Source: Ruditapes philippinarum
Taxonomy: Eukaryota
Length of the DNA: 64,000 nt
Direction of reading: 5' to 3'
Assembly: GCF_026571515.1 (NCBI RefSeq)
Contig: NW_026857404.1
Span: 1-64,000 of the forward strand
The position numbers and the translations under genes were made by a program. Below are positions 16,429-63,949 of the stretch, piece after piece (within the stretch, counting starts at the first letter, position 1; every line of letters begins with the position of its first letter). Under the pieces are notes generated by a model. That model made no database searches. It had not been told where the DNA came from and worked only from the letters and a program-made list of their open reading frames with translations.

Positions 16429-16844
16429 CTAATCGGGTGTTATCAAGTATCCTGTAAATGTACAAGTTCTGTCACGGCCTAAAAAAATGTTAGGAGTACC
16501 GTAAATATCTACAACATCATTTTTATTCAGGTGAAATGTTCCAGACTGTGTTAACGGGGACGATCCATATTCAAACGTGTCGTCGTTATCATATGGGTCC
16601 AACCACAAAAATAATTTCATACTACCATTGATCCTTAAATGAGCGTCAACATAACCCAATTTAGCATAATAATCCTTTGTTACCGTAACAGAGAAATGAT
16701 ATAATCCGGGAACTTTACAGGTAAATTTCCCGGTAGAAGTGCTGTACGCATTGCCGTAGTTAATGTATACTGATCTGAACACAAGGGTAGTTTCTGATGA
16801 TGAGCTTTTATCTAAGTAGTATGCTGTAAATGCCACTTTTAACT
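16429..16844 (-). CDS. Terminal exon: globular C1q domain
   Basis: Acceptor ttttcag|AG (phase 1). VAFTA...[35 protein letters not shown]...LNKNDVVDI...[10 protein letters not shown] matches the canonical gC1q motifs (AF, FxxVxxNxG, GxFxCxxPGxYxF, F[ST]GxL). Confidence 0.93.
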
Positions 16845-19800: not shown

Positions 19801-22800
19801 TAAATATCAATAAAATTCGTTTTTGAAGGTTGCTTAAAAGGCTTTATATCCTTGTTATCGAATGTAGAACTTGTAAAGACCTTTTTACGACGCGAACGTT
19901 GCTATGAAAAAAGACCGGATGTAGTATGTTCACGCGCATGCGCTGTCTGCATAGGGCAAAAGATTATCTTTCTGCATAGAAATGTAGCAGAAAGTTCATT
20001 AACATTTCCGAGTTAGCTAAAGTAAAAGTATAAAATAATATAATTAGGGGCTTTTTACAAATACACATAAGATGCTTTATAGCTTTGAGACCAAGCTTGC
20101 CATTCAAAGACAAGGAAAAGTTGATATTTTAAGAACGACCCCTCCCGCCCTTGCGATCACGAGCTTGATATATCTTAATTATTGTTTTGAAAAATGTGCA
20201 AATAGAATTTATAAGTAAGAAAAGAGATCAACTTTAGGTTTGATTAAATAGTCCATTTTAAAAATCAATACATTTATATAACAAAATATGTAATGTCATA
20301 CAATGTTTGGCATGCACAAAATAATAGTAATTAATTTCAAAAAATAAATAAAAGGAAATATAAAATTAGATTCGACCTTGCTATACCTTCAGATTGAAAA
20401 CTGACACTTAGAGTCTTTACTACTTGTCACAACACAGAGGGTATTTCAGCAAGTACTTGTTGTAGTTAAACATAAACCATGTTTACCGTTATGCAATACT
20501 TTAGAATCCTCAAGATTTTCAGGGGAATCCGTTAATTACCAACAAAAGGTCATTAAATATTCAAATATCTCAGGGTAATATTGCCAAACAATATACACAT
20601 ATAGATTACATAAACGTCGCACGATTATTATTAATACCGGCTTGACGCTTTGATCCGAAAAAAAATTAACGCGTCAATATCAAAACCAGTGTTAAAAAGC
20701 CAATAAACACCACTCAAACCGATATTATTTCTTAAAAATATCAAAAGCATTGACTGTTATAGCCAGTAAAAGAATGACAAAGATTTCTTTGAACGATAAA
20801 AATCAAAATCAATAAGGGTGTTTGTGTATTTGTAATTGTATTTCCGTTAGAACCAATGTTTGAAAAATATTGCAATGAGCTGCATCTAGTTAATGTGCCT
20901 TTAACTATCCTTACTTCATAGAATAGAATTTTGTTCAAATTTTATAAATATATCTGAGACAACTTTTCAAGCATAAACTCTGTGGACAAATTCAATCCCC
21001 ATAAAGTCTGTTTGTTACGCAAGACTAGAAAAAAATATGTACACTTGAAAACATAATTCCTCTTCACGAATTTATCGTTTCGCTTTCATGATATCACGAT
21101 TTTTAGATTTAAACAATTTCATTTTTATATTTTCACGACTTTAGCTTATCACGTTTCATCTACATAAATTCACGAACTTACGTTTCAAAATACATCTATT
21201 CATGACAGTTTATATGCAATTATGATTTTAAGAAGATGACTTAGTAAAGACAAAAATGTTACGTTAAGATTTATTCGTAAAATTAAATTTCTGAAGTTAA
21301 AATCACGTGTTTGTTATTTTTTGTACGAGAAGTTGATTTATACTGAAACCGATGAATTCTTAAAGCTTATATCGTGAATTCTTTAATTTGATATACAGAA
21401 GTCGCGAAATCACAAAGTTCAATCCGTCAGTTCGTTAAGTCGTATTGATGAAGTTAAATTTCCATTCCGGTCTGTCGGAGTTTGTTGATGAAAATCATTG
21501 ATAGAGTCATGAACAAATCACGAAATTTTTTTTTTATAATTTACCAATTTCGAAACAGAAAACAATAATTACGTTTCAGTTATCGATCAGTTGTCATGAC
21601 GTTTTAATATGTTTATCGATTGTTTTATCATTAGAACAAAAAAAATAATAAAATAAACAGAAATAAAAAACAAGATAAAATTTAAATAAAGATTCAAGTT
21701 TATAAGCATATATCAAAATACGATATAAGTTTACTTTGAAATCTCAAATTTTTCTTTTGTGATTTAGGCGGAGGTCAATGAGAAAACATTTCCACTTAAA
21801 AAGAAAATGTTTTAATGCCTATTTTGCGCTGAGATGTTTCTCATCGTCCATCTTAGTAGCCTAATCTGAGCTTTCTTAACCTATTTAAATATGCATAGAA
21901 ATCGTTTCTTCTTTAATGCGGATAGGGACATAAGACCTTATTTTCACGAATGTCAGATGTATTCATATAAATTAATAAAAAGTGTGTGAGGGATTCGATT
22001 GTAATTTGCACAAACTGATAAATTTGTGCGTTTGATTCAGTGCGTAGTTGAGTTTATTAATCATATACCTGCACACTGGCGTTTGTTACAAGTTCTTGTT
22101 TCGTCCGGACTTCCGTTACAATATCTTCCTAATAAAGATGGTCTTGGGTTAGAACATGCTCTTAGCCGACTTTGAATTCCACCTCCACAACTGACACTAC
22201 ATGAACCCCATCTTTGCCAACTTGACCATCCACCATCTAAAAGGAAAACCACTTTATGTATCTTGAAGGAATGGCTATATCATATCTATATACTTTTATT
22301 AGTGTATATTTTAAACAATGTTAACGAGCCTTTTTTCATTTAGGGGCATTGTTAGTTTATAGGAGTTTGTCGATAGTAAAATTTTATTACCCCTCTTCTA
22401 GATTTCCCTTCCCCCATTTTGATTGGATATTGATCAACCGAAAGAAATTTATATTACCGATCCAGACAGGTAATATACACATTAAAGTTCGCCGAGTGAG
22501 ACTAAAAAAGGATTGGAGCATTAAACTAAATACCGTATTCCGGTATATACCGGACACGGCGCTTTAATGATAAAATGCTAAAATCTTGCTTTTTAACCCA
22601 ACGGAATGAACTTTAAAATGTCTAATTCATCTTTTCACATTTATGTATGATAATGAATGAAAAACTTGAAAATCGGCGAAAAAAAACGATATTTGTCTAT
22701 TTTCTGATAATGATTTCTGCAAGCGTCTACATGTGCTGCTCAAATCCTGTATTTAGTTAAATCCAAGTTCGCCTTTTGGTACCTCACGTTTTAAACAACA

Positions 22801-25800
22801 TGCACTGTGACGATGCATGTACTGTTCGATGTTGCGCAGTGTAAATTCCGATATACAATCACTTTTTAACTGTCAAATAAAAAAATATTGACCAAAATAG
22901 AGTAATGATAAATATTCTAATCAGTATTTAAAGAAATTATGACCACGTCAAAGCTTGATATTATGTACAAAAAAGTTTCTTCAACAGACAACTTCTTTTT
23001 GTTTGTTTGTATTCGTTAGGTACGAAAGCAAACACGTCATGTATTTATGTGACGTCATTTTGTGATGAAGGGGTACCCTACTGGGAATCTTATTTCGACG
23101 TTTCATTGATTTATTTTAAAATCGTCTTACTCGGCAGTGGAAGGGCAATAAAATTATTATTTTGGTTTTGGAGTGATATACATAGTATGTGGATATATTA
23201 CCTTCTTAGATAAAATATTAGGCTCGGGTGACATACAATATTGGCAGTTAATATATCCACATAATATTATATCACTCCAAACCTAAATCGCACATAGGCC
23301 TAAGTATTAGATCTTATCGCAATATTAGACCAAAAAGAAATATAATGAAAAAAAAATAGTAAAAAATGATTGTACAAATTGTCTATAAATATTGTTTGCA
23401 TTATCAATTTCATTAATTGCTGTATAATAATTGTCTCATAAAATCGGGTTTCTCTAACTTGCTTAACCCGTTGTTCCGTTTTCAATACGAATAAGCTATG
23501 ATTTCTGGAGCAAGGTTGAAAAAACAAACATTGTTGACATGTTGTTGTGCGCTTCTTTCTTTTTTGTTAAGGCAGGAATAATGCTAAGAAAGTATTTCAT
23601 AACAAACTGCACGTATATAACTTACTGCATTGACAAACGTAAGTTTCATTATTTAAACATAACTGTCAAATAACATCGCACTAGCTTGTTAAAAACATGT
23701 CAAAATGGTTTCCTTATCCGAAAACCATAAGGACAAAATTTAGAATTATCAAAGTTATCTCGTACTTAATGCAAGAATAGCGTTTATGCACAATATTCGA
23801 TGCACTAACATCTACTGAAGGGCACGATTTTCCCCCATAATTATGCACAATAAAATAACCAAAAATATAAACTTATCATTCATACTTGTGTGAAATATAA
23901 TTATAATAACTTGATATAAAAACTTTGATTCTTTCAATAATCTGTGTTCATAGCAACAAAAAAAGGTATAAGTACTTTTAAAACACCATTCTTGCATGCA
24001 CTTTAAACGAGAAATTCATCACCAAATTGATGTATATCCTCTTCAAAATCAGCAAGATTTAAGACCTTTAAGACGTTTTCCATTCTTTCCTTAAAATGCT
24101 TTAAATTACAGATAAAAGGCTAAAATTCTCGGAATTTTAGAAGGTTAAGTAAAATATCGTAATCTAACTAATTCAATTTTTAAACACATAGCTTTAGCAT
24201 CAAATAATTAATACAAGGCAAAACAGACATTCTTTATTACACTGATTACAAAAAACCGTAGCTTTGGTTGCTATGGTAACAAAAGTAATAAAGAAAACAT
24301 TAAATAATTTTAAATAATGGTATTTAATTGAACTATTCCACAAACAAATAATTGAATAATTATATCTATATAATAATAGTATTTACAAGCATTACTTAGA
24401 TTACAAAAAAAATATTAAGAGCTTGCAGTGTTTCCTTTAATATTTTTTGAGTTACAGATATCGACTGTGTACTCAGTATTATTCAAACTGTACCTATGAA
24501 TAACATTAGTATATTCTTTAATTGAAATAATCTTTGTAAAAAATTGAAACAAAAGATTCTTGCAAACACATTGAATGTCACAAATGACAGCTAACTCCTC
24601 ACTGCTGTCTTGCAAACTTCTCATCGCAGTTTGTGAGTTTGGGCCAAACAGGATAACAACAGTCATGTTTTCTCACATGCACTCAGGTTTTGTAAATAAA
24701 AGTGACTGGTAAACTTACAAAAACTTGTTTCACAATCAACTAAAAAAAATACTGTTGCATCTGTCACTGCACTATTCAGCATTTTCAGGGATACTGTTTT
24801 CAGCAGGGTTTCTTTGTAAAGACATAAATTTTATGAAAAGATAAATCTAAGACACTTTTGGATTACGGTTATATATCTGCAAATCATCAATTTCTCACAG
24901 GCCATCCTGAAATAATAAAACTCCGAATAAGTCTTAAAAAAACAATACATTGTATATGATGATTTGACTGAACAGAAATATACTACAAGTAAATTGTTGT
25001 ATCATACTGCACATGTACTCGTATTAGGTTCTTCATGTAAGTTCTTTTGTAATATATTGGTTTACATTATCATCGTGTAGCAGTAACATTTATCTTTAAC
25101 ATAATTGAAATAATTTGAATCTAAATCATATATATATAAAAACATTTGTGTTGAGCTACAATTCAGGAAACTTATCATCACCCTTATTTGAAAGAAATAG
25201 TTAAGAATGGTAAATTCATGATGATTATTTACACATGTATACAAACATAATAAATTATCTATTTCTTTAAAAAAATATCAATCAGTTCTCATGAATTGTA
25301 AAAATTGAAAAATGTTTCATCAGCAAAAAGGGTACTTCATTATAAACGATAGAAATATCCTGGTACAATATACTACATGGCAATGGGTTATCAAGTTGTC
25401 AATATGCACTTGACCTTTGACCCCTTGATCCCCAATATCAGTAGGGGTCATCTACTAGCCAAAACCAATACACCTATGCAGTTTTAAGGCCAAGGGCGTA
25501 TGGGTTGTCAAGTAATTGATCTGATACAGTTTTTGCCTTTAAGGTCAATATGACCTGAACCTTTGACCCTTTGACCCCAAAATCAATAGGGGTCATCTAC
25601 TGGCCATGAAAACACTTACCAGTACATTTCCTTGTGATATTAGAAAATAAAACTAAAACCTGCCGGGCATTATCTATTTTTTAAATTTATTTATAAAACG
25701 AGAATCCTCACAGCATGGTGGGTGATATAAAATTATAACAAAAAATATTTCATCATTATGGCAGCGGTATCAAATATTTCATTAGAACTGATTTTGACCG

Positions 25801-28800: not shown

Positions 28801-31800
28801 TTAAAGTGACGCGCATTCAGTATACATAATACGCGTTTTTACACTATGTTTGCATAACGTAAACAACGTCACATCAAAATATATGCACGATTGTGCAATA
28901 CCATTTTTACGGAGTGCAAAATCGGCATAGGTGTGTGATAAATAAAGTTACCGCATTTATAGAGATAAGGATACAAAACAGGGTCGGATGTACTTCTATG
29001 AATTAATCAAGTGCATGAGGGATTTGGCTGAAATTTGCTTAAAGTGATAAATTTGTACATGTGTAAACAATTTCATTTCAGTGCTAAGTGGACCGATTGA
29101 ATCATATACCTTCACACTGGCGTTTGTTACAAGTTCTTGTCTCTTCCGGACTTCCGTCACAATATCTTCCTAATAAAGATGGTCTTGGGTTAGAACATGT
29201 TCTTAGCCGACTTTGAATACCACCATCACAACTGACACTACATGAACCCCAGTTTTCCCAACTTGACCATTCACCATCTAAAAGAGAAGACACCTTCAAG
29301 TATGTTCAACAGTTTTTATATCACATAGATTTTTATAACTGTATATTATAAACGTTTTTGTAACGAGCCTTATGTAATATAGGGGCATTACAAGTTGTAG
29401 ATTAGTATTTATTATATAAGACCTAATCACATAATATTATATTAAAAAGAAGTAGAATGAAAATATAATGACAACATCGTTTTTCATCAATTGCTGTATA
29501 ATAATATTGTGATAAAATAGGTTTTCTCTATCTTGCTCAAACCATTGTTTTTTTTCAATACTCATAACTCATGATTTCTCGAGAATCAAAAAAAATAATG
29601 TTGACATGATGTTGTGCGTTTTTTTTTTCTTTTTTTTGGTGAGGCAAGAATAATGCTAGAAACATAATTCTTGCATAAAAAAAATGCGCAAACGCATGTA
29701 TACAGAGACGAAAATATGCAATAATGGATAAAATCACGTAAGCTGCGCCGTTGTTTCCGTTTATTCAGCAGGACCCTGTGTATCATATACATAGATTACT
29801 GCATTGACAAAAGTAAGTTTCATTAACAAACCAGCACTGTCAAATGACTTTGAATGCGTCCCTATATACTCAGTCGAATTTAAACATGTGTCGTATAATC
29901 ACCAATTATAACTTGCATGCAGTCATACAAAGATCATCTGTGTAATGTACATAAAATTATTTATATGGGGGCGAGTGATGGGTTTTATGTCGTACCAACA
30001 CAGTAGAGGTCATATGGTGACTTTCCAGCTTCAGTGTTGAAAGAATCCCCTGGATCCCCCTCCGTGAATTATATCAGTCAGGCCCGAGCGGGAACCTGAG
30101 TAAAACCTCCGACATGTAGCTTCCACACAGTCAAGAAGGATTCCAAAAACCCTAGCGTGATTCGAACATTTAGTTGCGAGGAGCAAGCGTTTAAAATTAA
30201 ATCCTTTACTATTCTCTTTATCCTTTCTTGTATATTATAAAATGAAGGATAATTTGTATTTGACAATTTAGTGTTTTGTGCAGTTTATCATTATCCAATC
30301 AATAAGGTATAGACAAAGGTTTCTGATTAACTTGCTTTGTGAGAAAAAGTACAACCACACAAGGTACAACACATGTTTCATGAAAATGATTGTTTTTGAA
30401 TATAAATTAAATGCACCGAATTATATGCAAAAATGGGTCAAAGACAGAAAAGGCCGGGTTGCATTGGTACACCAAATACCATGAAGCTGTGATGTTACAA
30501 ATAAAATTTACCATTAACCATTATTGTCGAAAATTTAACTGTGGGTAAACAGGAACAGGATGATGTATACAACTGAAATCGAATCCTACGGTATGGGACC
30601 ATGTGTCAATGCTGTATTCCTAATATCAAGAGGCTGTGATATGTAGTTGCTGAGAAAACTGTTACGATAGTTTCCTACCATTGACCATCAATGTCGAAAA
30701 TTTAACTAAGTTGGTAAACAGGAAGTGGATTAGCTGCAGACCTGAAATCGAATCCAACATTAACATTTTAAATAATAGACACTCGATTTTTTTCCGACCA
30801 ACACTTCTCCGTTTTCGTGAGTAAAGAATATAATATACCTGCACACTGATTTTTGTTGCAAGTTCTTGTCTCGTCCGGATTTCCATCACAATATCTTCCT
30901 AGTAAAGATGGTCTTGGGTTAGAACATGTTCTTAGCCGACTTTGAATACCACCATCACAACTGACACTACATGAACCCCAGTTTTCCCAACTTGACCATT
31001 CACCATCTAAAAGGGAAAGACACTTTAAAATATGTTAAATCAGTTGTTATATCATTAAACTTTTATAACTGTAAATTAGAAACAAATTTGTAACGAGCCG
31101 TATGTAAAATAGGGGCATTACAAGTTGTAGATTAGACTTAATTATATTAGACCTAATCACATAATATGATATTAAAAAGAAATAGAATGGAATGAAAATA
31201 TAATGACAAAATCGTTTTTTTATAAATTGCTGTTTAATAATATTCTGATTAAAAAGGTTTTCTCTATCTTGCTCAAACCATTGTTTCGTCTTCAATACTA
31301 ATAAGTCATGATTTCTCGAGAATTTAAAAAAGAATGTTGACATGATGTAGTGCGTTTCTGTTTTGCTTTTTTTTCTTTTTTAGTGAGTCAAGAAAAATGC
31401 TGGGAACATAATTCTTGCAGATAATATTGCGCACGTGCATGTATACAGAGACAAAAATATGCAATAACTGATAAAATCACGTGAACATGCGCCGTTGTTT
31501 CCGTTTATACAGCAAGCCCCTGGGTATCATATACATAGCTTACTGCAATGACAAAAGTAAGTTTCATTAACAAACCAGCACTGTCAAATGACTTTGAATG
31601 CGTCCCTATATACTAGGTTGAATTTAAAGATGTGTCATACAATCACCAAGTATAACTTGCATGCGGTCATGCAAATCTCATCTGTGAAATGTACATATAA
31701 TTACTTTTATGTGTGTGAGGGATGGGTTCTATGTCGTACCAACACAGTAGAGGTCATATGACGACTTTCCAGCTTCACTGATGAAAGAATCCCATTTGCC

Positions 31801-46800: not shown

Positions 46801-49800
46801 AATTTAAATTTATTAATCTTCTTTTTCCCCTTTTTCAAAAGTAAAATTAAAAAAATGAACGATAATTTGTATTGGATAATATAGTGTTTTGGGCAGTTTA
46901 TCATTATCCAATGAATTAGGTATAGCCATAGGTTTCTGATTAACTTGCTTTTGGAAAAAGTGCAAACCACACAAGGTAAAACACAAAATGTTTCATGAAA
47001 ATGATTGTTTCTGAATATAAAGAAAATGTACCGAATTATATGTAAAAAACGGGTCAAAGACAGAAAAGGCCGGGTTGCATTGGTAAACCAAATACCATGA
47101 GGCTTTTGATGTTACAAATAAAAATTTACCATTAACCATTAATGTCGAAAATTTAACTGTGGGTTTAACAGGAAGAGGATGAGCTACACACCTGAAAATC
47201 GAATCCTACGGTATGGGACCATGTGTCAATCTTGTATTCCTAATATCAAAAGGCTGTGATATACAGTTGCTGAGAAAACTGTTACGAAAAGTGTTCTACC
47301 CATTGACCATAAATGTCGAAATTTTAACTAAGTTGGTAAACAGGGAAGTGGATTAGCTGCAGACCTGAAATCGAATCCAACATTTTACATTTTGAATAAT
47401 GGACACTCGATTTTTTTCCGACCAACACTTTTTCGTCTTCGTGAGTAAAGAATATAATATACCTGCACACTGATTTTTGTTGCAAGTTCTTGTCTCGAAT
47501 GGACTTCCATCACAATATCTTCCTAGTAAAGATGGTTTTGGGTTAGAACATGTTCTTAGCCGACTTTGAATACCACCATCACAACTGACACTACATGAAC
47601 CCCAGCTTTCCCAACTTGACCATTCACCATCTAAAAGGGAAGAAACTTTAAAGTATGTTAAAACACATGTTATATCATTAAACTTTTATAACTGTAAATT
47701 ATAAACAAATTTGTAACGAGCCTTATGCAAAATAGGGGCATCACAAGTTGTAGATTAGTATTAATTATATTAGACCTTATCACATAATATTATATTAAAA
47801 AGAAATAGAATGGAATAAAAATATAATGACAAAATCGTTTTTTATAAATTGCTGTATAATAATATTCTGATAAAATAGGTTTTTTTTTTCTTGCTCATAC
47901 CCTTGTTTCGTTTTCAATACTAATAAGTCATGATTTCTCGAGAATTTAAAAAAGAATGTTGACATGATGTAGTGCGTTTCTGTTTTGCTTTTTGTTTTCT
48001 TTTTTTAGTGAGTCAAGAAAAATGCTGGGAACATAATTCTTGCAGATAAATTGCGCACGTGCATGTATACAGAGACAAAAATATGCAATAACTGATAAAA
48101 TCACGTGAACATGCGCCGTTGTTTCCGTTTATACAGCAAGCCCCTGGGTATCATATACATAGCTTACTGCAATGACAAAAGTAAGTTTCATTAACAAACC
48201 AGCACTGTCAAATGACTTTGAATGCGTCCCTATATACTAGGTTGAATTTAAAGATGTGTCATACAATCACCAAGTATAACTTGCATGAGGTCATACAAAG
48301 ATCATCTGTGAAATGTACATTTAATTATTTTTATGTGTGTGAGGGATGGGTTTTATGTCGTACAAACACACTGTGTAGAGGTCATATGGCGACTTTCCAG
48401 CTTCACTGTTGAAAGAATCCCATGGGTCCCTCTCCGTGAATTATATCAGTCAAGCACGAGCGGGCACCTGAGTAAAACCTCCGACATGTAGCTTCCACAC
48501 AGTCATGAACGATTTCAAAATTTCTATCGGGATTTGCACTTTAAGTGGCAAAGAACAAGCGTTTCAAAATAAATCCTTAACTACTCACTTTTATCCTAAT
48601 CATGTATAATATAAAATGAAGGATAATTTGTATTGGACAATTTAGTGTTTTGTGCAGTTTATCATTGTACAATGAATAAGGTACAGCAATAGGTTTCTGA
48701 TTAACTTGCTTTGTGAGAAAAGGTACAACCACACAAGGTACAACACATGTTTCATGAAAATGATTGTTTCTGAATATAATTAAAATGCACCGAATTATTT
48801 GTAAAAAACGGGTCAAAGACAGAAAAGGCCGGGTTGCATTTGTACACAAAATAACATGAGGCTGTGATGTTACGAATAAAATTTTCCATTAACCATTAAT
48901 GTCGAAAATTTAACTGTGGGTTAACAGGAAGAATATGAGCTACACACCTTAAATCGAATCCCACTGTATGGGACCATGTGTCAATGCTGTATTCCTTATA
49001 TCAAGAGGCTGTGATATGTAGATGCTGAGAAAACTGTTACGAAAGTTTCCTACCATTGACCATAAATGTCGGAAATTTAACGAATTAGGTAAACAGGAAG
49101 TGGAAAAGCTGCAGACCTGAAATCGAATCCAACGGTATGGGATCATGTGTCAATGCTGTATGCCAAATATCAAGAGGCTGTATTAAGTAGTTGCTGAAAA
49201 AACTGTTACAAAAATTTCCTACCATTGACCATAAATGTCAAAAAATTAAGTAAGTGGGTTAACAAGAAGTGAATGAGCTGCAGACCAGAAATCAAACCTC
49301 ACAGTTTGCCAAATATCAAGAGGCTGTGATATGTAGTTGCTGAGTAAACTGTTACGAAACTTTCCCACCATTCACCAATAATGTCAAAAATGTAACTAAG
49401 TGGGTAAACAGGAAATGGATGAACTGCACACCTGAAATCGAATCCACGGTATGGGACCATGTGTCAATGCTGTATGCCAAATATTAAGAGGCTGTTATAA
49501 GTAGTTGCTGAGAAAACTGTTACAAAATTTCCTACCATTAACAATTAATGTTGAAAATTGAACTAATTGGGTAAAGAGGAAGCTGACAAGCTGTAGATCT
49601 GAAATCGAATCCAAAAGTATAGGACCATGTGTAAATACTGTATACCAAATATCAAGAGACTGTAGTATGTTGTTGCTGAGAAAACTGATACGAAAATTTC
49701 CTAGCATTGAACATTAATATCGAAAATTTAACAAAGTGGGTAAACAAGAAGTGAATGAGCTGCAGATCTGAAATCAAATCCCACGGTATGGGTCCATGTG

Positions 49801-52800
49801 TCAATGCTCTATGCCAATTACCAAGAGGCTGTAATGACTAATTGCTGAGGTAACAGTTACGAACATATTTCCCCGCCCGTCCGCCTGCCAAGCCTGCCTG
49901 CTGCCCGACATTCACCATACCATAATACGGCTTTGCACCAGAGCAACCCTGCCAATACTTGATGAACAATCATCTTATTTGAAAAATTACTAACACGCGA
50001 ATATATTTTATTTGTATATACTTTTTTAGACTTTTACTGATTTTAGACGCAACATTATAATGAGATAAAGTATGTATTCCAATGTGATATCCATTATTAT
50101 AAAGCCATATTTCATATTCAATCTGTGACAAAACCAATTCAACATAAACCAATAGGAAGAACATTCAAAAATTTTAAACAAGACTAAAAGTACAGTACAT
50201 TTGGTTAACATTATATTAATTTTTGCAAAAATTTATAAACCATTTGCTTACAATAAGATTTTGCTACACAACACAAAAACAGATTAAAGATTTAAGGAAA
50301 TTGTTGAAACATCAAAATACTTCTTTATATCTAATTTAACATGTCACTATAATGAACAAAAGGGCCTAGAATTGTTTGGAAAGAACTATCCGTTGTTTTT
50401 GTTTTGTTTTTTAAGTCTAGAAACACCTAATAAAATTCACAAATGGGCGGACAATCTGTCTCTAGAGATAGTTTGAATCAATAACTACTCTCGATCTCAC
50501 TGTTTAACGCCATTTTGTAAATTCTTCATTTTCTAGAATTGTTTGTTTCATTTATTTTATCATTTTAGATAAATCATATTTTCATCTAACATTCAGTTTT
50601 TTAACTTGTTTTTAAGCTCCCAGTTTCAATGTCTTCATGAGGAAATTGCCTCAAACTGTGACACCCAGTGGGTAAAAAGACTTTACGTCACTCTGAAGAC
50701 TTCTGTTTTTGAATTTCTCAAGATGAAACAAAATCTTACCTGACACCAGAATAAACAAAATATACCCTTAAAGTTACAGGTGTGTAATATACAGTATGTT
50801 TGATATTGAATGAGTGTAAGTTCATACTGAATTTATTAGACGAGTTGAATAAAATTATATTATGCGAAACTCTTGCGAGAATTATATTTTTTTTGGCTCA
50901 ACGAGTTCAATAAATTCAGTAATGCACCTTCATCAATGTAATATTCTACACATCACATACCCGAAAGACTGTTAAATGTGAAAAAAGAATATTTTTTCAT
51001 CGGCGCGTCTATAGAACAAGGCGTCTTTAAACTATGCTTGTATAATGCAAATTACGTTATGTCACAATATATGCAGACCGTACAATACTCTTTTTATAGA
51101 GTCGAAAAATCGACAAGGGTTTGTCTTTTTCGCCTATATATTCCATAAGAAAAAACGTCAAGCAATACAAGTTTATTTCCATTTATTTGGGCATGTGATC
51201 AATAAATTTTCCATTTGTCATAATTAAAATATCAAACTCGCTAAAGAAAATGTTATAAAGTTCACCAGAGGCTCTATTTTAAACACTTTCTTGAACTCGT
51301 TGAAAAATTATATATCTTATGAAAGATCTTTTACATTTTAAATAATGGACACTCGATTTTTTCCGAACAACACTTATTCACCGTCTTCGTGAGTAAAGAA
51401 TATAATATACCTGCACACTGATTTTTGTTGCAAGTTCTTGTCTCGTCCGGACTTCCATCACAATATTTTCCTGATAAAGATGGTCTTGGGTTAGAACATG
51501 TTCTTAGCCGACTTTGAATACCACCATCACAACTGACACTACATGAACCCCAGCTTTCCCAACTTGACCATTCACCATCTAAAAGGGAAGACACTTTAAG
51601 GAATGTTAAAACAGTTGTTATATCACATAAACTTTTATAACTGTATATTATAAACAAATTTGTAACGAGCCTTATGTAATATAGGGGCATTACAAGTTGT
51701 AGATTAGTGTTATTTATATTAGACCTAATCACATAATATTGTATTAAAAAGATATAGAATGAAAATATAAAGACAAAATCGTTTTTCATCAATTGCTGTA
51801 TAATAATATTCAGATAAAATAGGTTTTCGCTATCTTGCTTGTTTTTTTTTTGCGAGTCAAGAATGCTTGGGCCAGTTAAAGAACTCCTATTGACATGCAA
51901 TTTTTCTTAGTCTTACCCCGCCTTTCTGTATTTTATAGATATAGTTACAAGATTTTACATTCTTGCAAAAAACTTTTTACGCCATTTAACGCCATTCAAC
52001 GTTGAAATTTTGTCTCATGCTTATACTTTCTCATACATTAATATTATCGTGCGAATCAAAATGTAAAAATATTCGCGACGATTAACCTTATTTTCGCATG
52101 TCTCTTTCGAAAACTGTAACTTATTTACAGTACCAGTGTCTATAGTATAAGTTCTTCGAAAAAAAGAATGTTAATTCCATTCAACCACAATATTTCCGAA
52201 ATAAAGACAAACAAATAAAAATAAAATAAATTACTAAACTTGTAATTTGTATGTAGCACTGGGACAATATATTCACTTTAACATAATGCACAACTACTAA
52301 ATACATTATTATATTTGACTATAAGATTAATATACCGTATATGAGACATGATCTTATATCAAAATCCACTGAATAATTCACAATCCTAATGATAAAGACA
52401 CTGACAAACGTTCTCTTAAATTAAAGTATAACGCTCTTTAGCACTGTCGCTCGTCCAGCGACCATGACGTTTAAACATTCTGTCTTTAATTCCATTGTTG
52501 GCCGCCGCTGAAGCTCCACCTGCCCTTAACGAAAGCAGACACTATTTAGAAATGTCACTTACATGCGGCATGAAAGCTAATCTAAATTCATCTCTCAAAT
52601 TAGTATATGACATTGGCTTATTAACTGTCTTTTTCTTAAATCCATTTTTAGTCTTACTAATATTACAAAACAAAAAATAACTTGAATCTAAATTTGCCCA
52701 TCTTATATATTTCTCAAGATTAACAACTGGGCATAACTTGGTACCAGTTCTAGCTATCAATATCATATCCAAGAACCATTCCTGTATTTATCCGCCTACT

Positions 52801-55800: not shown

Positions 55801-58800
55801 CACCACCACCACGTGGCTGTTCTTCGCTCATAATTACACAAGCAGACGAAAAAAGAAAATACGTTTGTGTATAGCCGGCTGCCCAAAGCTGAATGAGCGA
55901 TATACACTTACTTATTCAAGCACGTAAACTTCGTGCATCATAATACTGGCGACACCTATCGGAAATATAAATCGGACGAAGGGAAATTAATTTTCTACTA
56001 ATTCATTGCATTCAAACTTAGAAAATTACATATCTCGCTGTCTATTAAGAAGAGCCAGTGCGCTCGACTATTCTCAGTGCTTGATAATAAAATTAGAGCC
56101 TAAATAATGTAGATATTTTCAAAGTTCAAAGGGACCATGGTTCTGTAAAAATTCACAATTACAATAGCTCTCCCTATTTTTTTAATAGTCGAGCGTAAAC
56201 AAGAGATTTAGGCAATCTTAAATCGCAACAGGCGATACTTTAACTACCTCAAAAAGGACACCATAGAAACCGTCAGAATGTTGTAGCGAACTTGAAAGTA
56301 AATTCAGTTCGTCGAGAAATGAATCAAATAAAATGGATGGCCATTTCTAGGAACATAGGAACATAGTTACAGTTAATTTTAGCATTGACGAAACTAACAG
56401 TTGCTCATTGGATGATGAACGCTATCTTTTTTGCATATCGCTTGACATTCTATAAAAAACAACAACATCAACATGACCTTTACTGGTCCCAGGGCCCCAA
56501 ATCAACAAAAATATCAACGGCCATATACAGCATATGGCAAGCTGAGCTTGTGAATAAGGACACTTACAAAATTTTGGGTCAAAAAAATTATCCATATAAC
56601 ATTGACGTAAAACATGTTCAGAGACGGTTTCAATGTTGAATGACATAATTGATTTATCTGATGAAGGCAGCTATTTTAACATTATTTATCATAAATGAAA
56701 GTGAATTCTGTCCGATTGAAATAAGTGCACGAAAATTCCGTGCGAATAAATTTCACTGCTCACAGCTTTAAGGCCATGCAAATATTTCCAATAGTTTTAT
56801 ATTTTACAACACCATACATTTTTATTTCAATTAGAATTATTTATAATTAAATGTGTTTATTAAATTATCTTTTCTTTAGACTTAAACGTCGTATAAGTCA
56901 GGTTCAGTTACTCGTATTTTCTTCAAAAGTGTCTTCTCACAAACGTAAGAAGACAGTTCGTTAGGACGAACAACAATCTATCCTCGGCTTCGCCTCGGAC
57001 AATTTGTTGTTTAGCCTAGCAAACTGTCTTCTTAAGTGTGTAAGAAGACACTTTTAAAGAAAAACTCGTACTGTATCCATTACGTCTAATGTACATTTGA
57101 TTATTTTTAATGGAATAGCGTGGTGCGTTTTGTGCCGTACCAACACAGTAGAGGTCATATGGCGACTTTCCAGCTTCACTGTTGAAAGAAACCCCCGGAC
57201 CCTCCTCCGTGAATTATTTCAACTACTCACGAGCGGGCATCTGAGTAAAACCACTGACATGTAGGTTTGAAATTAAAGCCTTTACCACGAAAAGATATGC
57301 AAAAGATCGTTCACTCTATATCCTATAATGTATATTAACGAATGAGGGGTAATTTGAATTGGAAAATATAGTGTTTTGCGCAGTTTATCATTATACAATG
57401 AATAATGTACAGCCATAGGTTTTTGATTAACTTGCTTTGTGAAAAAAGTGCAACCACACAAGGTACAACAAATTCGCCATGTTTCATGAAAATGATTATT
57501 TCTGAACATAAATAAAATGCACCGAATTAAATGTAAAATAACGCTCCCTGGACAATAATCTTATTTGAAAAACTACCATTACCGACACGCGAAAATACTA
57601 ACATTTGTATATACGTTTTATTTTATTTTATTGATTTTTAGACGCAACATCATAATGAGATAAAGTTTGTTTACCAATGTGATATACACTTAAATGTGTT
57701 GCGTATATTATACAACCATAATTTATTCAATCTGTGACAAAAACAATTCTACATAACCAATAAATCTGCGGAATTCTTCAGGGAAAGTATAAAAAGAACA
57801 AGACTAAAGCACAGTACATTTGGTTAACATTATATTAATTTTTTGTAAAAAAATTATAAACCAATTGCTTTATCACTTACAATGAGATTTTGTTACACAA
57901 CACAAAAATCAGGATATAGATTTGGGGAAATATTCGAAACGTTTAAGTATTTATTTTATATCTAATTTAATATGAACAAAAGGGCCAAGAATAGTTTAGA
58001 AAGAACTATTCGTTTTTTGTTTTGGTTTTTTAGGTTTGGAAACATCGAATAAAATTACCTTTTTTATTTGCGTCAGACAATTCTTCCGTTAGATCATGTA
58101 AAGACTCGGTTATGATGTTAATTTCTTCATACATTGTTTTGTTGATGTTCACTGTCACTTCTTTCATCGTCTCAATAGACTTGTCACATCTTTTAACGAA
58201 CGTTTTATTATATTTTTCCATTCGGCTTTCTGTTTCAGTCCTCATTTCACTAACAGAATTGTTGATGTTTTCAACTGCACCTTTCAATACCGTCACAAAC
58301 TTTTTCCGGATCCGTTTTTCAGAGGATAATGTTTTCTTCACAATCGTCCCTAACAAATGTTTGTCGGTATCACTTTTCTTTAAATCTTGAACTTGAAGAG
58401 AAAGAGTCGTCAGGTTTGTTTCAATTTGGTCTAAAAGTCCAGATTTTTCAGTTGCTTGAGTAACGTCTGTACTGATCACATCTTTTATTTTCAAGAGGGA
58501 TGCAATACTTGTTACTTTAGCTTCTAAGGAATCAATTCTAACTAAATCTTTATTGTCTCTATCTTGATCACCAGGTGTCGATTGCCCGCCAGGTTCTGTC
58601 AAACGAAATAACATATGTTTTTATATGCATAAAGAGTAACAAGCTTCTAATGTTCAATAACGTATCTTTTGTATTCGTGGCATTCCATTGTTTAAACTTT
58701 AGACTACATAATTTGACCATGGTAAAATCCACTACATAATGTGTTTGTTAATTACCTAATTTCAAGGCAATGCGATTCCGGAGAAGATGTTTTAAACAAT

Positions 58801-61800: not shown

Positions 61801-63949
61801 CTATTAAAGGTTTCTAAATTTCAAGCATGGAGGTAAATTTGCTCGGCCGACCATTTGAGCAATTTTATAGAAAACTATACAAGGATAATTCTTGCAGTGT
61901 ATTTATGGAAATTAACGAACTAATTAAGGAGTATTTTTTCTATTTTAGCTTGTTCTTTAGACCAAAACAATTTTAGCAATATTAGTAAAGTACTGTCCAA
62001 TGATCATTTCATAAACAATTCAGATGTGGATTGAACACTTTCTTTTCTTATAAGCACTGGTGGCGATCTTGCTTAACAGACCGGAAAATATGTGCAAGTT
62101 TTATGTCAAGGTCCATCTAAGGATCACTCCTGTATGGTTTTATCAAAGTCTACCCAAAAGTTATTGATATGTCATTTAAAGTCTTTTTTATTTTTAGCTC
62201 TGACGGCCATTTTGTTATTTCTGTAGAGTTTCATCACATTCTATTTATCAATTAAGGATATGGTGTCACTTTCCACTTTTTTTTCTATTTTTAGCACCGG
62301 CAACCATGTTGTTAAAAGAAAACCGGAAGCATTTGAGCAATATTTATGAAGGCCAATCTAAGAATTATTTCTGTAAAGTTTCACCTAATTCTACCAAACA
62401 GTTATTGAAGAAATATCGTTTTAAGGCTTTTCTATTTTTAGCTTTGGCGGCAGTCTTGATCACTAAGAGATTGAGAATATACTAAGGTGAGCTTAAAAAA
62501 AATATTTTACTTTTTCAAAAAGACAAGAAGGAACCGCAACTATGAGTAAAATTAGTGGTCAAAAACCAAATACCAACTTGACCTACAATCTAGGATATTT
62601 GGTCTTAGTACTACAAATGATTATTATGCGTTAGTTTGTCAAAAGTAATCGTCTGGAAACCATTTAATTTGGTAAAATAGTAAAAATATGTTCACATTAG
62701 CATGCTGTATGTAATTTCTCATTTCTAAATATATCATTCGTCCGGTAACTATTTTTTGTGGCAGTGACATTAATCGAGGAGGCCAAAAATAAATCCTAAC
62801 AGAGGTCTATGCATATGATTACTTTTTACCATACCGGGTTCATCATATAATTTGTTTGTTTGTTTGTTAATTTTACGCCTTTTTCCAACAGAATTTCAGT
62901 CATAAAGGCGGGTAGTTTCCTAACCATCGTTCCTGGAGAGTATCACCAGTACTAGACTACCTTCCTCTGCGCTAAACTACCCACGCCAGAGAGGTAACTG
63001 GATAAGAAGTTATCGACTTTAACCCCTCGACCACGGAGGCGGTCGGTTCATCATATAAGGTTATTATATACCAAATAGAGAAAATAAAACTCCCTAAAGA
63101 AAGCCCAAAACGACAAAATTGAAACTGTTGCAGGCTCGGTTTGATTGAGCCTGTTCATGGACGATACCGTAAAGTGCAAACTACCGTCCACGCCCCCTAG
63201 CACCGGCTTAAGCCGAATTCAACATTTTAACATGAAGTGGTATTATTTTGAATTTAGAAACATCCGCAGATGTGTTCATACGGTGATTATCATGGAGCCT
63301 TCAATGTGGCACAGTAGTGCCATTCCATGAAAAGCGGTGTATTGTCCCCAAGTAATAGAAAGCGTGTGCCCTTAACGAGAAAACGATGGGCAGAATCAAG
63401 TTCGATTACAATATCTCATTGCTGACCGGACTATTTTTATATTTGAAGTTACAGTGACTTTTGCTCAGGGGATCCAACAGTTATCCCAACCGAGCTCTTC
63501 ATATTACTAGAAGCTTGTTGCATACCACGTTTAAATACAATATATCTGAGTAAATTATGAAACCATAAGTACAAATAGAACTTAATATATATCCAGTTTG
63601 AGGCTCACCTCGCACGAACAGACAGACAAACGTTCCTATTTTTATATTCACGGGTACATACAAAGACATGAATCATGGCAGACAATATTTTTATGTTACA
63701 ATAAAATGAAGGCAATAATAGATTACCTTGACTTGATGCCTTGTTGTTTGGTTCTGACAAATGCCTCTTTGAAGCTTCTAATCTCCTAAGCCGGGAGTTC
63801 ATTTTTGAAATCTCGAACTTATTTTGAAAAATCTCTTTCTGCATATATTCTTGTAGCTCCATGATAGATTTACAATCACAGTCCGTGTCACAATTTGTTC
63901 CATTAACAATAATTGTAACAATGACAATGACAAGTTTTATTTTATCCAT
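16429..63949 (-). CDS. Multi-exon gene for a secreted coiled-coil / 10x TSR / C1q-domain protein (~960 aa)
   Basis: Exons 63727-63949 (223 nt), 63609-63635 (27), 58059-58595 (537), ten TSR exons (nominally 168 each) and 16429-16844 (416). All readable junctions are GT-AG, phase 1. Nominal sum is 2883 nt = 961 codons including the stop. Joining of the exons is inferred, with no transcript evidence. Confidence 0.8.
17035..17410. repeat. Degenerate ~32-bp minisatellite
   Basis: Recurring aaatac-x-cacgaattc-x-caacac cores. Confidence 0.45.
17947..18406 (+). repeat. Source copy of a 460-bp segment duplicated in inverted, permuted form at 20340-20803
   Basis: Near-identical reverse complement in two blocks. 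The ORF track shows the same peptide tail ([19 protein letters not shown]) on opposite strands. Confidence 0.92.
18845..19004 (-). mobile_element. tRNA-derived SINE
   Basis: A-box tggccgagtgg; central tttccttgagcaagaaacttta...ctcagtactggttggttccaggaacggattcg. Confidence 0.7.
20340..20803 (-). repeat. Inverted, circularly permuted copy of 17947-18406
   Basis: rc(17947-18237) is followed by rc(18232-18406); aaaaat is duplicated at both ends. Confidence 0.92.
22069..22236 (-). CDS. TSR exon 10 (most divergent copy)
   Basis: 168 nt; [56 protein letters not shown]. Confidence 0.9.
23160..23288. repeat. Imperfect palindrome (MITE-like)
   Basis: ttggagtgatata...tatgtggatatatta pairs with taatatatccacata...tatatcactccaa. 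Confidence 0.65.
25375..27562 (+). mobile_element. Helentron-type element with ~158-bp tgaccttgacc satellite array
   Basis: About 10 diverged units (gggttgtcaagttattgatc...aaggtcaatatgaccttgacctttgacc...aatcaataggggtcatctactggcc), then (GACG)n at 27476-27495, hairpin cccc-N-gggg and ataaa. Interrupted at ~25610-25980. Confidence 0.75.
28622..28945. mobile_element. Palindromic (hairpin) MITE; related copies at ~33170, 36590, 45110, 50800
   Basis: Arms ctgaatttattgaacgagttgaataaa / tttattcaacgagttcaataaattcag surround gcgagcctttggcgagc. Confidence 0.7.
29110..29277 (-). CDS. TSR exon 9
   Basis: 168 nt; [11 protein letters not shown]...[16 protein letters not shown]; GT-AG intact. Confidence 0.9.
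30839..31006 (-). CDS. TSR exon 8
   Basis: 168 nt; [11 protein letters not shown]...[11 protein letters not shown]...NKNQCA; GT-AG intact. Not called in this frame by the ORF track. Confidence 0.9.
33432..33599 (-). CDS. TSR exon 7
   Basis: 168 nt; [11 protein letters not shown]...GKYC...NKNQCA; GT-AG intact. Confidence 0.9.
34290..34535 (-). mobile_element. tRNA-derived SINE remnant carried by each repeat unit (also at ~57120-57260)
   Basis: Minus-strand head gagtagttaagg...cctcgccac...g(t/c)gcgaatccc and conserved body ggaaagtcgccatatgacc...gttggtacgacataaaa. Confidence 0.55.
34760..35745 (+). mobile_element. Helentron-type non-autonomous element with internal ~159-bp tandem repeats (representative copy; others at ~30455, 31915, 38520, 40080, 41330, 43080, 47058, 48820)
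   Basis: Unit aaaatttcctaccattgaccataaatgtc...gagaaaactgttac is repeated about 1.5-6 times and followed, in complete copies, by a (CCGC/CCTG)n microsatellite. This is the usual layout of bivalve Helentron-derived satellite carriers. Confidence 0.65.
37196..37363 (-). CDS. TSR exon 6
   Basis: 168 nt; [20 protein letters not shown]...GKYC...NKNQCA; GT-AG intact. Confidence 0.9.
38923..39090 (-). CDS. TSR exon 5
   Basis: 168 nt; ...[28 protein letters not shown]; GT-AG intact. Confidence 0.9.
41730..41899 (-). CDS. TSR exon 4 (two 1-nt homopolymer insertions, probably consensus errors)
   Basis: 170 nt. An extra t in ggtttttggg and an extra a in agaaacat; otherwise matches the other TSR exons. 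Confidence 0.7.
45729..45912 (-). CDS. TSR exon 3 (unreadable; lies in corrupted sequence)
   Basis: Recognisable remnants (ttagccgact, catgaacccc, aacttgacc, accatct) sit at the expected unit position, but the block is full of homopolymer expansions. Confidence 0.5.
47463..47630 (-). CDS. TSR exon 2
   Basis: 168 nt, intact splice sites. Variants SNPKPS and DGSPFET. Confidence 0.85.
51411..51578 (-). CDS. TSR exon 1
   Basis: [56 protein letters not shown]. tttag|AT acceptor, G|gtatat donor, 168 nt. Confidence 0.9.
52385..53298 (-). pseudogene. Tyrosine recombinase remnant
   Basis: [75 protein letters not shown]: catalytic R...HxxR...HGRW boxes, now frameshifted. Confidence 0.88.
53560..55000 (-). 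pseudogene. RT / RNase H / methyltransferase-like remnant
   Basis: RT: [32 protein letters not shown]. RNase H: [30 protein letters not shown]-like: [39 protein letters not shown]. Confidence 0.85.
55238..55831 (-). pseudogene. gag-like ORF1 of the YR retrotransposon
   Basis: [12 protein letters not shown]...[38 protein letters not shown] is the typical gag pattern of invertebrate DIRS/Ngaro elements. Confidence 0.8.
56917..57063. repeat. ~146-bp imperfect palindrome centred on cctcggcttcgcctcgg
   Basis: Left arm ttttcttcaaaagtgtcttctcac...; the reverse complement of the right arm reads ttttctttaaaagtgtcttcttac... Confidence 0.8.
58059..58595 (-). CDS. Coiled-coil exon (179 codons)
   Basis: Open frame within ORF 58030-58614 with acceptor tttgacag|AA and donor AAAG|gtaatt, phase 1-1. 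Heptad-like segments [56 protein letters not shown]. Confidence 0.85.
59392..60995 (+). mobile_element. Old Helentron-type element(s) with tgaccttgacc motifs
   Basis: Begins aacaaga, has scattered gtgaccttgacc cores and ends cagacggacgg...atatgccgccc. Confidence 0.5.
61084..62500 (+). mobile_element. Helentron-type element with ~120-bp tandem repeats
   Basis: Begins aacaagag and ends ggtgagcttaaaaa. About 10 diverged units of ttttctatttttagctctggcggccat...ggaaccatttgagcaatt. Confidence 0.6.
62851..63046 (-). mobile_element. tRNA-derived SINE with (AAAC)n tail
   Basis: Head accgcctccgtggtcgaggggttaaag, 3-prime end ggcgtaaaattaacaaacaaacaaacaaa. Confidence 0.65.
63609..63635 (-). CDS. 27-nt phase 1-1 micro-exon (GTFVCLFVR)
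   Basis: aaatag|GAACG...GCGAG|gtgagc, following a 91-nt intron. The donor is conserved in the paralogue (33-nt exon at 4327-4359). Confidence 0.5.
63727..63949 (-). CDS. First coding exon: signal peptide + short Cys motif + coiled coil
   Basis: [61 protein letters not shown]...SSQ. Hydrophobic N-terminus, heptad-like L/M/I spacing, donor CAAG|gtaatc. A close paralogous exon lies at 4445-4664. Confidence 0.85.

What the first reader, a model, noticed from the sequence alone, without database searches (positions are those of the whole stretch)
16429..63949. Secreted C1q protein with a modular TSR stalk: a properdin/C1q-like hybrid encoded by in-frame cassettes
Seen: signal peptide, coiled coil, ten TSR exons and a gC1q exon lie on one strand, and every coding intron is phase 1. 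Known: gC1q heads trimerise and act as pattern-recognition modules, bivalve C1qDC proteins often use a coiled coil in place of collagen, and properdin is a complement-activating TSR polymer. Inference: a trimer held by an N-terminal coiled coil and a C-terminal gC1q head, with three TSR rods between them. Any subset of TSR exons can be skipped, lost or duplicated without a frameshift, so stalk length (roughly 5 nm per TSR) may be a tunable property of an immune or adhesive recognition molecule.
Basis: partly seen in the sequence, partly recalled or inferred. Interest (0 to 1): 0.85.

Follow-up and report, generated by a model that had tools for sequence, protein, structure and literature searches.

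The report
Clam C1q protein with thrombospondin-repeat stalk
This is one real Manila clam gene for a secreted protein with a coiled coil, a variable run of thrombospondin repeats and a C1q head; public annotation already predicts it and clam relatives share the design, so it is a modestly new variant of a well-known immune-lectin family.

Summary
On the minus strand lie a signal-peptide exon (63949-63727), a 537-nt coiled-coil exon (58595-58059), ten TSR-homologous exons and a terminal gC1q exon (16844-16429). Every intact coding junction is phase 1.

Only eight TSR exons are intact in this assembly. One (41899-41730) carries two 1-bp homopolymer insertions. One (45912-45728) lies in a about 1-kb patch of homopolymer-smeared, probably low-quality sequence.

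The organism is Ruditapes philippinarum and the locus is RefSeq LOC132749606. Its five predicted isoforms join signal peptide, coiled coil, 3-4 TSRs (six and part of a seventh in X4) and C1q. Some skip single TSR exons, and X5 ends in an alternative exon without C1q. Paralogues in the same genome keep the same exon order with 1 TSR, and further TSP_1+C1q genes with other 5' modules carry 2-4. TSP_1+C1q proteins also occur in Mercenaria, Mactra and Dreissena.

A model of three C1q heads scored ipSAE 0.93 against 0.00 for the best control. No paper describing the architecture was found.

Verdict: a real gene, a TSR-stalked variant of bivalve coiled-coil C1qDC proteins, with recent exon amplification. 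Function is inferred only. Interest is moderate.

The parts
63727..63949 (-). Exon 1: start codon, signal peptide (h-region [10 protein letters not shown]), conserved CDTDCDC motif, first short helical segment; phase-1 donor
   Evidence: It equals residues 1-74 of RefSeq X1. Paralogous exons occur at seven or more loci in the genome.
58059..58595 (-). Exon 2: 537-nt helical/coiled-coil region, phase 1 at both ends
   Evidence: Helices 95-250 in the AF2 model at low pLDDT. Local heptads. Paralogues at 59-92% identity.
51411..51578 (-). TSR exon 1 (intact, 168 nt, phase 1-1); in no RefSeq protein isoform
   Evidence: The exon is 1-6% diverged from TSR2-9, while its upstream intron is 10-13% diverged.
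47463..47630 (-). TSR exon 2 (intact); in no RefSeq protein isoform
45728..45912 (-). TSR exon 3: degenerate copy, donor GT lost, inside a homopolymer-smeared patch
   Evidence: (weak hit)
41730..41899 (-). TSR exon 4: 170 nt, two 1-bp homopolymer insertions give a frameshift and stop; RefSeq X4 starts at an ATG inside it
38923..39090 (-). TSR exon 5 (intact); used in RefSeq X4
37196..37363 (-). TSR exon 6 (intact); used in RefSeq X4
33432..33599 (-). TSR exon 7 (intact); in X1, X3, X4 and X5; skipped in X2
30839..31006 (-). TSR exon 8 (intact); in all five isoforms
29110..29277 (-). TSR exon 9 (intact); skipped in X3
24884..24906 (-). Alternative terminal exon, coding part only (G)WPVRN then stop; phase-1 acceptor tttcag|GA. 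It gives the C1q-less isoform X5.
22069..22236 (-). TSR exon 10 (intact, the most divergent, 89-93% identical to the others); in X1-X4
16429..16844 (-). Terminal exon: complete gC1q domain and stop codon
   Evidence: The homotrimer model supports binding.
4326..4664 (-). Signal-peptide exon of the next paralogue in tandem (79% aa identity to exon 1). It marks the 3' limit of this gene.

Best explanation
The span is one gene of the Manila clam Ruditapes philippinarum (RefSeq LOC132749606). It encodes a secreted C1q-domain-containing protein built as signal peptide, N-terminal Cys motif, about 230 residues of helical coiled coil, a run of thrombospondin type-1 repeats, and a C-terminal gC1q head. 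Shown here: the exon set, its phase 1-1 symmetry, the domain identities, the predicted isoforms, the conserved exon order in paralogues, and the recent tandem amplification of the TSR exon together with its intron. Inferred: three chains are joined by the gC1q head and the coiled coil. The TSRs then form a stalk of roughly 5 nm per repeat, whose length varies from 3 up to possibly 10 repeats by exon skipping and by gain or loss of exon copies. One isoform drops the head altogether. Most likely function (inference from the family): a soluble lectin-like pattern-recognition or opsonising molecule of the bivalve C1qDC type. The TSR stalk would add reach and perhaps a second binding surface.
For: Domains: Pfam C1q and TSP_1 score well above their cut-offs. 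Each TSR unit carries the WxxWxxW, RxR and six-Cys core and a CSVSCDGG O-fucosylation-type motif, invariant in all eight intact copies. One gene: RefSeq X1-X4 join the 5' exons or TSR exons to the C1q exon, and their peptides match window exons exactly. Family: the four-part order recurs at C7829 and C5966 and in broken form at C3357, C1725 and C12037. TSP_1+C1q proteins occur in Mercenaria, Mactra and Dreissena, and in two short Logan contigs that are almost wholly coding, so likely cDNA (453 aa on 1422 nt; 470 aa on 1980 nt). Amplification: TSR exons 1-9 are 92-99% identical and share 77-98% identical upstream flanks. In all 28 pairs the exon is less diverged than its flank, for example TSR1 against TSR7 at 1.2% versus 9.8%, p=1.4e-4. 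Trimer: three copies of residues 478-615 scored ipSAE 0.93 against a best control of 0.00, with partner pLDDT 89 and runs agreeing in at least 95% of contacts. The calibration mark was reached by 21 of 30 proteins solved as homo-pairs and 0 of 23 solved as single chains.
Against: Near-identical exons make short-read junction assignment ambiguous, so the RefSeq isoforms may be partly artefacts. Four of the five isoforms join exon 2 directly to TSR7 or TSR8, leaving TSR1-6 unused. Two TSR copies are broken in the assembly. The coiled coil is a low-confidence prediction (pLDDT below 50) and its oligomer state is untested. The trimer pass may reflect the model's memory of solved gC1q trimers. Function is wholly inferred, with no expression, ligand or challenge data for this gene.
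Confidence: 0.78

Rival explanations
1. Only the four 3' TSR exons (33.6, 31.0, 29.3 and 22.2 kb) are real exons. The six upstream copies are recent intronic duplicates (pseudo-exons) that are normally skipped or are decaying, so the protein has a fixed short stalk of 3-4 TSRs.
For: RefSeq X1, X2, X3 and X5 splice exon 2 directly to TSR7 or TSR8. Two of the six upstream copies are broken. Paralogues with the same coiled-coil 5' end carry only one TSR.
Against: TSR1, 2, 5 and 6 keep open frames, all core residues and consensus splice sites. X4 contains TSR5 and TSR6 and starts inside TSR4. TSR1 is 3-8 times less diverged than its flanking intron. The defects look like assembly errors, because private 1-bp homopolymer insertions also cluster in the introns next to TSR2 and TSR4 and the degenerate copy lies in a smeared patch.
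Confidence: 0.25
2. All ten TSR exons are constitutive. The two defects are assembly errors and the RefSeq isoforms are artefacts of multi-mapping short reads, so there is one long product of about 950 aa and no tunable stalk.
For: Homopolymer-type errors cluster in this part of the contig. The first roughly 25 nt are identical in nearly all TSR exons and differences are sparse thereafter, which makes junction reads ambiguous. X4 is what a gene caller would produce from a full-length transcript whose frame is broken at TSR4.
Against: X2 and X3 differ by skipping exons that carry diagnostic substitutions (ESW/ENW, NKNQCA/NKRQCE). X5 uses a distinct terminal exon with its own acceptor. The degenerate copy lacks a GT donor as assembled.
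Confidence: 0.2
3. The protein is not an immune receptor. It is an extracellular-matrix, adhesion or cell-signalling bridge, in the manner of EMILIN/multimerin or of C1q-like proteins that bind the TSRs of adhesion GPCRs.
For: TSRs are typical matrix and adhesion modules. The nearest annotated relatives carry names such as hemicentin-, coadhesin-, SCO-spondin- or BAI-like. Membrane-anchored relatives exist, with a hydrophobic stretch, 4-5 TSRs and C1q, in P0137 and P0052. Among solved structures the head is comparably close to adiponectin, C1QL3 and cerebellin.
Against: The gene sits in a fast birth-and-death tandem family with pseudogenes, as do bivalve C1qDC immune lectins (PMC6835236). The signal-peptide plus coiled-coil front end is that of the sC1q-like type II class (PMC6835236, PMC8905726).
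Confidence: 0.3

Closest known systems
Bivalve sC1q-like type II C1qDC proteins (signal peptide + coiled coil + gC1q)
   Same: It has a signal peptide, an N-terminal coiled-coil region instead of collagen, and a single C-terminal gC1q encoded on one terminal exon. It belongs to a tandemly duplicating gene family with pseudogenes (PMC6835236).
   Different: One to ten TSR modules are inserted between the coiled coil and the head. The classifications I read list only 'other/uncertain' architectures or 'sometimes an additional domain', and the word thrombospondin does not occur in them.
RefSeq LOC132749606 (XP_060595415.1 and isoforms X2-X5), Ruditapes philippinarum
   Same: It is this very locus. 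Exon 1, exon 2, the TSR and the C1q peptides are identical.
   Different: The automatic models use at most six and part of a seventh TSR exon (X4), carry uninformative or misleading names (uncharacterized, hemicentin-1-like, mucin-like), and do not use TSR1-3.
Thrombospondin-1 type-1 repeats
   Same: This is the best PDB sequence match to the TSR unit (7yyk, 5.6e-34). It shares the three-Trp/Arg layered core, six cysteines, and C-mannosylation and O-fucosylation motifs.
   Different: TSP-1 has three TSRs inside a large multi-domain subunit that trimerises through its own coiled coil, and it has no gC1q.
Properdin
   Same: It is a chain of TSRs forming an elongated rod in an innate-immune protein. 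Its TSRs match at 5e-23.
   Different: Properdin has its own N-terminal domain, oligomerises head to tail, and has no coiled coil or gC1q. No properdin-specific feature was found here, and TSP1_CFP_C scored 18-20 bits against a cut-off of 27 on single exons.
Vertebrate C1q, adiponectin and C1QL
   Same: The gC1q jelly-roll head shares the family's conserved F/G/Y positions and has a predicted trimer interface.
   Different: The stalk is collagen in vertebrates. Here there are no Gly-X-Y repeats, and the stalk is coiled coil plus TSRs.
C1QL-BAI3 (ADGRB3) pair
   Same: From my own knowledge, vertebrate C1q-like heads bind the TSRs of BAI3. Here the two domain types are on one chain.
   Different: No evidence that these TSRs bind this head. 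It is a lead only.

Membership tests
C1q/TNF superfamily, C1qDC proteins | A gC1q domain recognised above the curated threshold | tested here: met
   PF00386 scored 59.5 bits against a cut-off of 23.7, covering profile positions 1-127 of 127. PDB matches to adiponectin, C1q A/B/C and C1QL3.
C1q/TNF superfamily, C1qDC proteins | Conserved aromatic and glycine core positions of gC1q | tested here: met
   F483 is invariant. F500, G516, F518, G524, Y526, F528, L583 and G609 are at least 90% conserved in an 18-sequence alignment.
C1q/TNF superfamily, C1qDC proteins | The head assembles as a trimer | tested here: inconclusive
   The model supports binding: ipSAE 0.93 against a best control of 0.00, pLDDT 89, at least 95% contact agreement, with the mark reached by 21 of 30 solved homo-pairs and 0 of 23 single chains. 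The pass may come from memory of solved gC1q trimers. No experiment.
sC1q-like type II (bivalve classification) | Signal peptide | tested here: inconclusive
   The N-terminus has basic residues (MDKIK), an 11-residue hydrophobic core with mean Kyte-Doolittle score 3.1, and a polar stretch NGTNC. It is conserved in paralogues and in Mercenaria. No dedicated signal-peptide predictor was available.
sC1q-like type II (bivalve classification) | A coiled-coil region directly N-terminal to the C1q domain | tested here: not met
   A helical, locally heptad-patterned region exists, but it is separated from the head by 1-10 TSRs. The architecture departs from the class definition (PMC6835236).
Thrombospondin type-1 repeat (TSR) proteins | TSP_1 domain with WxxW motifs, an Arg layer and six cysteines | tested here: met
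   PF00090 scored 40-45 bits per exon against a cut-off of 21.6. W, R and C positions are invariant in the eight intact copies.
Properdin | Properdin architecture (own N-terminal domain plus six TSRs, no other domains) | tested here: not met
   The N-terminus is signal peptide plus coiled coil and the C-terminus is gC1q. TSP1_CFP_C is below its cut-off on single exons. The TSRs are closer to TSP-1 than to properdin.
Complement C1q proper / C1q-like type I | Collagen-like Gly-X-Y stalk | tested here: not met
   No collagen family hit in Pfam on X1, and no Gly-X-Y run is visible in the sequence.

The most novel reading that the evidence does not exclude
The TSR-exon array is a somatic and germline length- and sequence-diversifying device for an immune receptor. 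Ten near-identical phase 1-1 cassettes, differing at a handful of surface positions, would be combined by alternative splicing and reshuffled by unequal crossing-over. This would give a population of trimeric C1q receptors of different reach and TSR surface. Alternatively, the fused TSRs bind gC1q heads of neighbouring molecules (a 'Rosetta-stone' fusion of the C1QL-BAI3 pair), so that the protein self-assembles into networks.
Probability: 0.12. Interest if true: 0.7.

Novelty: new variant of a known kind. Interest (0 to 1): 0.42.

Why it matters
Bivalves have hundreds to more than a thousand C1qDC genes, and these are treated as their main soluble recognition repertoire. Almost all described members are head-only or coiled-coil plus head. 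A subfamily whose stalk is built from TSR modules shows that the repertoire also diversifies by domain insertion and by exon copy number, not only by head sequence. Members have 1 to 10 exon copies, three different front ends (coiled coil, Cys-rich domain, membrane anchor), and are so far seen only in heterodont clams. The subfamily offers a simple natural series for testing how stalk length affects avidity and reach. The automatic names now attached to these proteins (hemicentin-like, ADAMTS-like, mucin-like, BAI) hide them from C1qDC surveys. The gene itself is ordinary in mechanism, being textbook phase 1-1 exon shuffling, and nothing here is shown experimentally.

Tried and rejected
The Logan and RefSeq proteins could therefore not be traced to their contigs.
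- I did not build or search a joined spliced model of my own. Searches were made exon by exon by reference, or with database proteins that the tools returned.
- Exon-only search with the C1q exon found only single-exon fragments from metagenomes, 43-79% identical. They are uninformative on architecture.
- dN/dS among TSR copies was too noisy to use among TSR1-8, with 0-7 differences per pair. It was about 0.3-0.6 against TSR9 and TSR10 (1.02 between those two). I used the exon-versus-flank divergence instead.
- Global 3.5-residue periodicity of the coiled-coil region was not significant (p=0.70) because the heptad register shifts. Only local heptads are seen.
- The AF2 monomer model was poor overall (mean pLDDT 57), good only for the head (about 90) and moderate for the TSRs. 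I did not use it for fold searches.
- Literature: four searches and five papers gave no description of a TSR+C1q protein. This is absence in the held library only.
- The properdin-hybrid reading was rejected as membership (see the membership tests).
- The idea that contig C3357 (92% identical coiled-coil exon) is the other haplotype of this locus was rejected. It has one TSR and a broken, 61-72% identical C1q exon.


Full report
**What is in the sequence**

The window is AT-rich (about 31% GC). All parts of the finding lie on the minus strand.

- Exon 1 (63949-63727) starts with ATG and encodes [20 protein letters not shown], then a CDTDCDC motif and a short helical stretch. It ends at a G|GTAAT donor after 223 nt, which is phase 1.
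- Exon 2 (58595-58059, 537 nt) begins after ...gacag and ends AAG|gtaat, phase 1 at both ends.
- The last exon (16844-16429) begins after ttttcag, encodes a complete gC1q domain and ends in TAG.
- Pfam scores the last exon as C1q at 59.5 bits (cut-off 23.7) and the repeated exons as TSP_1 at 40-45 bits (cut-off 21.6).

**The TSR exons**

A motif scan and tblastn found nine clear copies. A DNA alignment of a weak tenth hit showed it to be a true but degenerate copy. The real exon is 168 nt, or 56 codons. It runs from ttttag|AT to CAG|gtat, phase 1-1.

Eight copies are intact:

- TSR1: 51578-51411
- TSR2: 47630-47463
- TSR5: 39090-38923
- TSR6: 37363-37196
- TSR7: 33599-33432
- TSR8: 31006-30839
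- TSR9: 29277-29110
- TSR10: 22236-22069

Two copies are defective in this assembly.

- TSR4 (41899-41730) is 170 nt, with two single-base homopolymer insertions that create a stop.
- TSR3 (45912-45728) is degenerate and lacks a GT donor. It lies in a patch (45.6-46.6 kb) where 52-59% of bases equal their neighbour, against a window mean of 32%. The same signature marks the first 3.8 kb of the contig.
- Private 1-bp homopolymer insertions also cluster in the introns next to TSR2 and TSR4.
- I therefore suspect consensus errors of a long-read assembly, but I cannot prove it.

**Whose gene it is**

A full-library HMMER search with exon 2 returned a 427-aa protein 100% identical over the exon. 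Its cluster names it XP_060595419.1 of Ruditapes philippinarum, isoform X5 of LOC132749606. X1 (XP_060595415.1, 615 aa) sits in the same cluster. A further search returned X2, X3 and X4.

Mapping the isoforms onto the window exons gives:

| Isoform | Length | Composition |
|---|---|---|
| X1 | 615 aa | exon 1 + exon 2 + TSR7-10 + C1q |
| X2 | 559 aa | as X1 but omits TSR7 |
| X3 | 559 aa | as X1 but omits TSR9 |
| X4 | 504 aa | starts at an ATG inside broken TSR4, then TSR5-10 + C1q |
| X5 | 427 aa | exon 1 + exon 2 + TSR7-9, then a small alternative terminal exon |

The X5 terminal exon has its acceptor at about 24906 and encodes GWPVRN then a stop, so X5 has no C1q.

The public annotation thus already treats the span as one gene with cassette-type variants. 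From my own knowledge, NCBI's Gnomon reports alternative variants only with transcript support. I could not inspect that support, and near-identical exons make short-read junctions ambiguous.

**Independent support from paralogues**

I searched the clam's own assembly (1.41 Gb) exon by exon. The same order, signal-peptide exon, coiled-coil exon, TSR exon(s), C1q exon, on one strand, appears at:

- C7829: 29.7 to 24.1 kb, one TSR
- C5966: 10.7 to 21.7 kb, one TSR
- C3357, C1725 and C12037, in broken or partial form

XP_060603116.1 (433 aa) maps at 100% onto C7829 as exactly four exons, with boundaries at the same codon positions.

A second signal-peptide exon, 79% identical, lies at window 4326-4664 on the same strand. 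This marks the start of the next tandem paralogue and the 3' limit of this gene.

**Wider family**

TSP_1 plus C1q on one chain is annotated in Ruditapes, Mercenaria, Mactra and Dreissena. It also occurs on two short Logan contigs that are almost entirely coding, so likely cDNA. Three front ends occur:

- signal peptide plus coiled coil (this gene)
- a signal peptide plus a Cys-rich domain (for example P0036)
- an N-terminal hydrophobic anchor (P0137, P0052)

P0036 shares a 74-77% identical TSR-C1q back end with this gene while having a different front end. This is what exon shuffling of phase-1 modules predicts.

No oyster, mussel or scallop protein with both domains appeared in the lists. 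The searches were ranked and word-limited, however, so this is only a hint of restriction to heterodonts.

**History of the array**

- TSR1-9 are 92-99% identical in the exon, and TSR10 is 89-93% identical to them.
- Upstream flanks of TSR2-9 are 87-98% identical, those of TSR1 77-83%, and that of TSR10 is unrelated.
- Downstream flanks fall into groups, so duplication breakpoints differed.
- In all 28 pairs the exon is less diverged than the intron 30-330 nt upstream. For example, TSR1 against TSR7 is 1.2% versus 9.8%, p=1.4e-4.
- All Trp, Arg and Cys core residues are invariant, and changes sit at about a dozen other positions.
- This argues for selection or exon-focused gene conversion on the upstream copies, including TSR1, which no RefSeq protein uses.
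- Arrays of a 169-bp satellite lie in five of the inter-TSR introns. The satellite is common genome-wide, with more than 1,500 first-look candidates. The three local arrays that the search returned (in the TSR1-2, TSR4-5 and TSR6-7 introns) are more alike to one another (90-91%) than to copies elsewhere (88% or less). They may have been co-duplicated, or may have served as substrates for unequal crossing-over.

**How it probably works**

Shown: the domain composition and the exon logic.

Modelled:

- Three copies of the head (X1 residues 478-615) gave ipSAE 0.93 in each of three runs, against 0.00 for the best of three controls.
- Partner pLDDT was 89 and runs agreed in at least 95% of contacts.
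- The calibration mark was reached by 21 of 30 proteins solved as homo-pairs and 0 of 23 solved as single chains.
- Caveats: the job differs from the calibration, and solved gC1q trimers may be remembered by the model.
- The AF2 monomer model shows helices at 23-62 and 95-250 (pLDDT below 50), four beta-rich TSR units (pLDDT 50-70) and a confident jelly-roll head (about 90).

Inferred:

- The chain forms a parallel trimer pinned at the N-terminus by the coiled coil and the conserved CDTDCDC cysteines, and at the C-terminus by the head. Three TSR rods lie between.
- The number of repeats sets the reach.
- The head acts as a lectin-like recognition unit, as in other bivalve C1qDC proteins (PMC6835236, PMC10672478).
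- The TSRs possibly add a second binding surface.
- X5 would be a head-less TSR protein.

**Comparison and novelty**

The closest kind is the bivalve sC1q-like type II C1qDC protein. The difference is the TSR insert.

The TSRs are generic thrombospondin-1-like repeats (7yyk 5.6e-34; properdin 5e-23). Nothing properdin-specific is present and there is no collagen.

Papers on bivalve C1qDC repertoires that I read classify such proteins only as 'other' or 'with an additional domain', and never mention thrombospondin. Phrase searches for the combination found nothing.

The gene is therefore already predicted in a public database but, as far as the held library shows, undescribed. I rate it a new variant of a known kind and of moderate interest. 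The mechanism is textbook module shuffling, function is untested, and the main open point, which TSR exons are really used, needs long-read cDNA.

**Limits**

Noticed in passing
window 1-3800 and 45600-46600: Patches where 52-59% of bases equal the preceding base, against a window mean of 32%. This is a homopolymer-smeared look typical of unpolished long-read consensus. One patch holds the degenerate TSR copy. The other is the contig start and may hide the coiled-coil exon of the downstream paralogue.
   Followed up: partly
window 54729-55831 (-): Retroelement remnant inside intron 2. One ORF has a weak RVT_1 match (25.6 bits, below the cut-off of 29.6), and there are two neighbouring ORFs without Pfam hits.
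   Followed up: partly
window 31915-32400, 34829-35660, 40161-40556, 43713-44119, 48886-49835: Arrays of a 168-176-bp satellite lie in five of the inter-TSR introns. The unit is a common dispersed repeat of the genome, with more than 1,500 first-look candidates. The three local arrays that the search returned (34.8-35.6, 40.2-40.6 and 48.9-49.8 kb) are 90-91% alike, and copies elsewhere are 88% or less.
   Followed up: partly
window 26299-27318: A different tandem repeat (period 144/277) lies in the intron between TSR9 and the alternative terminal exon. It is GC-richer (0.40) than its surroundings and has a 99-aa ORF on the plus strand.
   Followed up: no
window 4326-4664 (-): Signal-peptide exon of a second family member, head to tail, 11.8 kb beyond the C1q exon. 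The rest of that gene runs off the contig start.
   Followed up: partly
G000:C3357:16900-33200 (+): Four tandem units of about 3.6 kb. Each has a short coiled-coil-like piece, a TSR exon and a C1q exon, and the C1q exons carry stop codons. It is a decaying tandem array of whole mini-genes.
   Followed up: no
G000:C5966:47700-55500 (+), protein P0036: A gene with a different, Cys-rich front end carries a TSR-C1q back end 74-77% identical to this gene's. This looks like an exchange of 5' modules between family members.
   Followed up: partly
It lies inside the last intron (between TSR10 and the C1q exon) and touches no exon.
   Followed up: no
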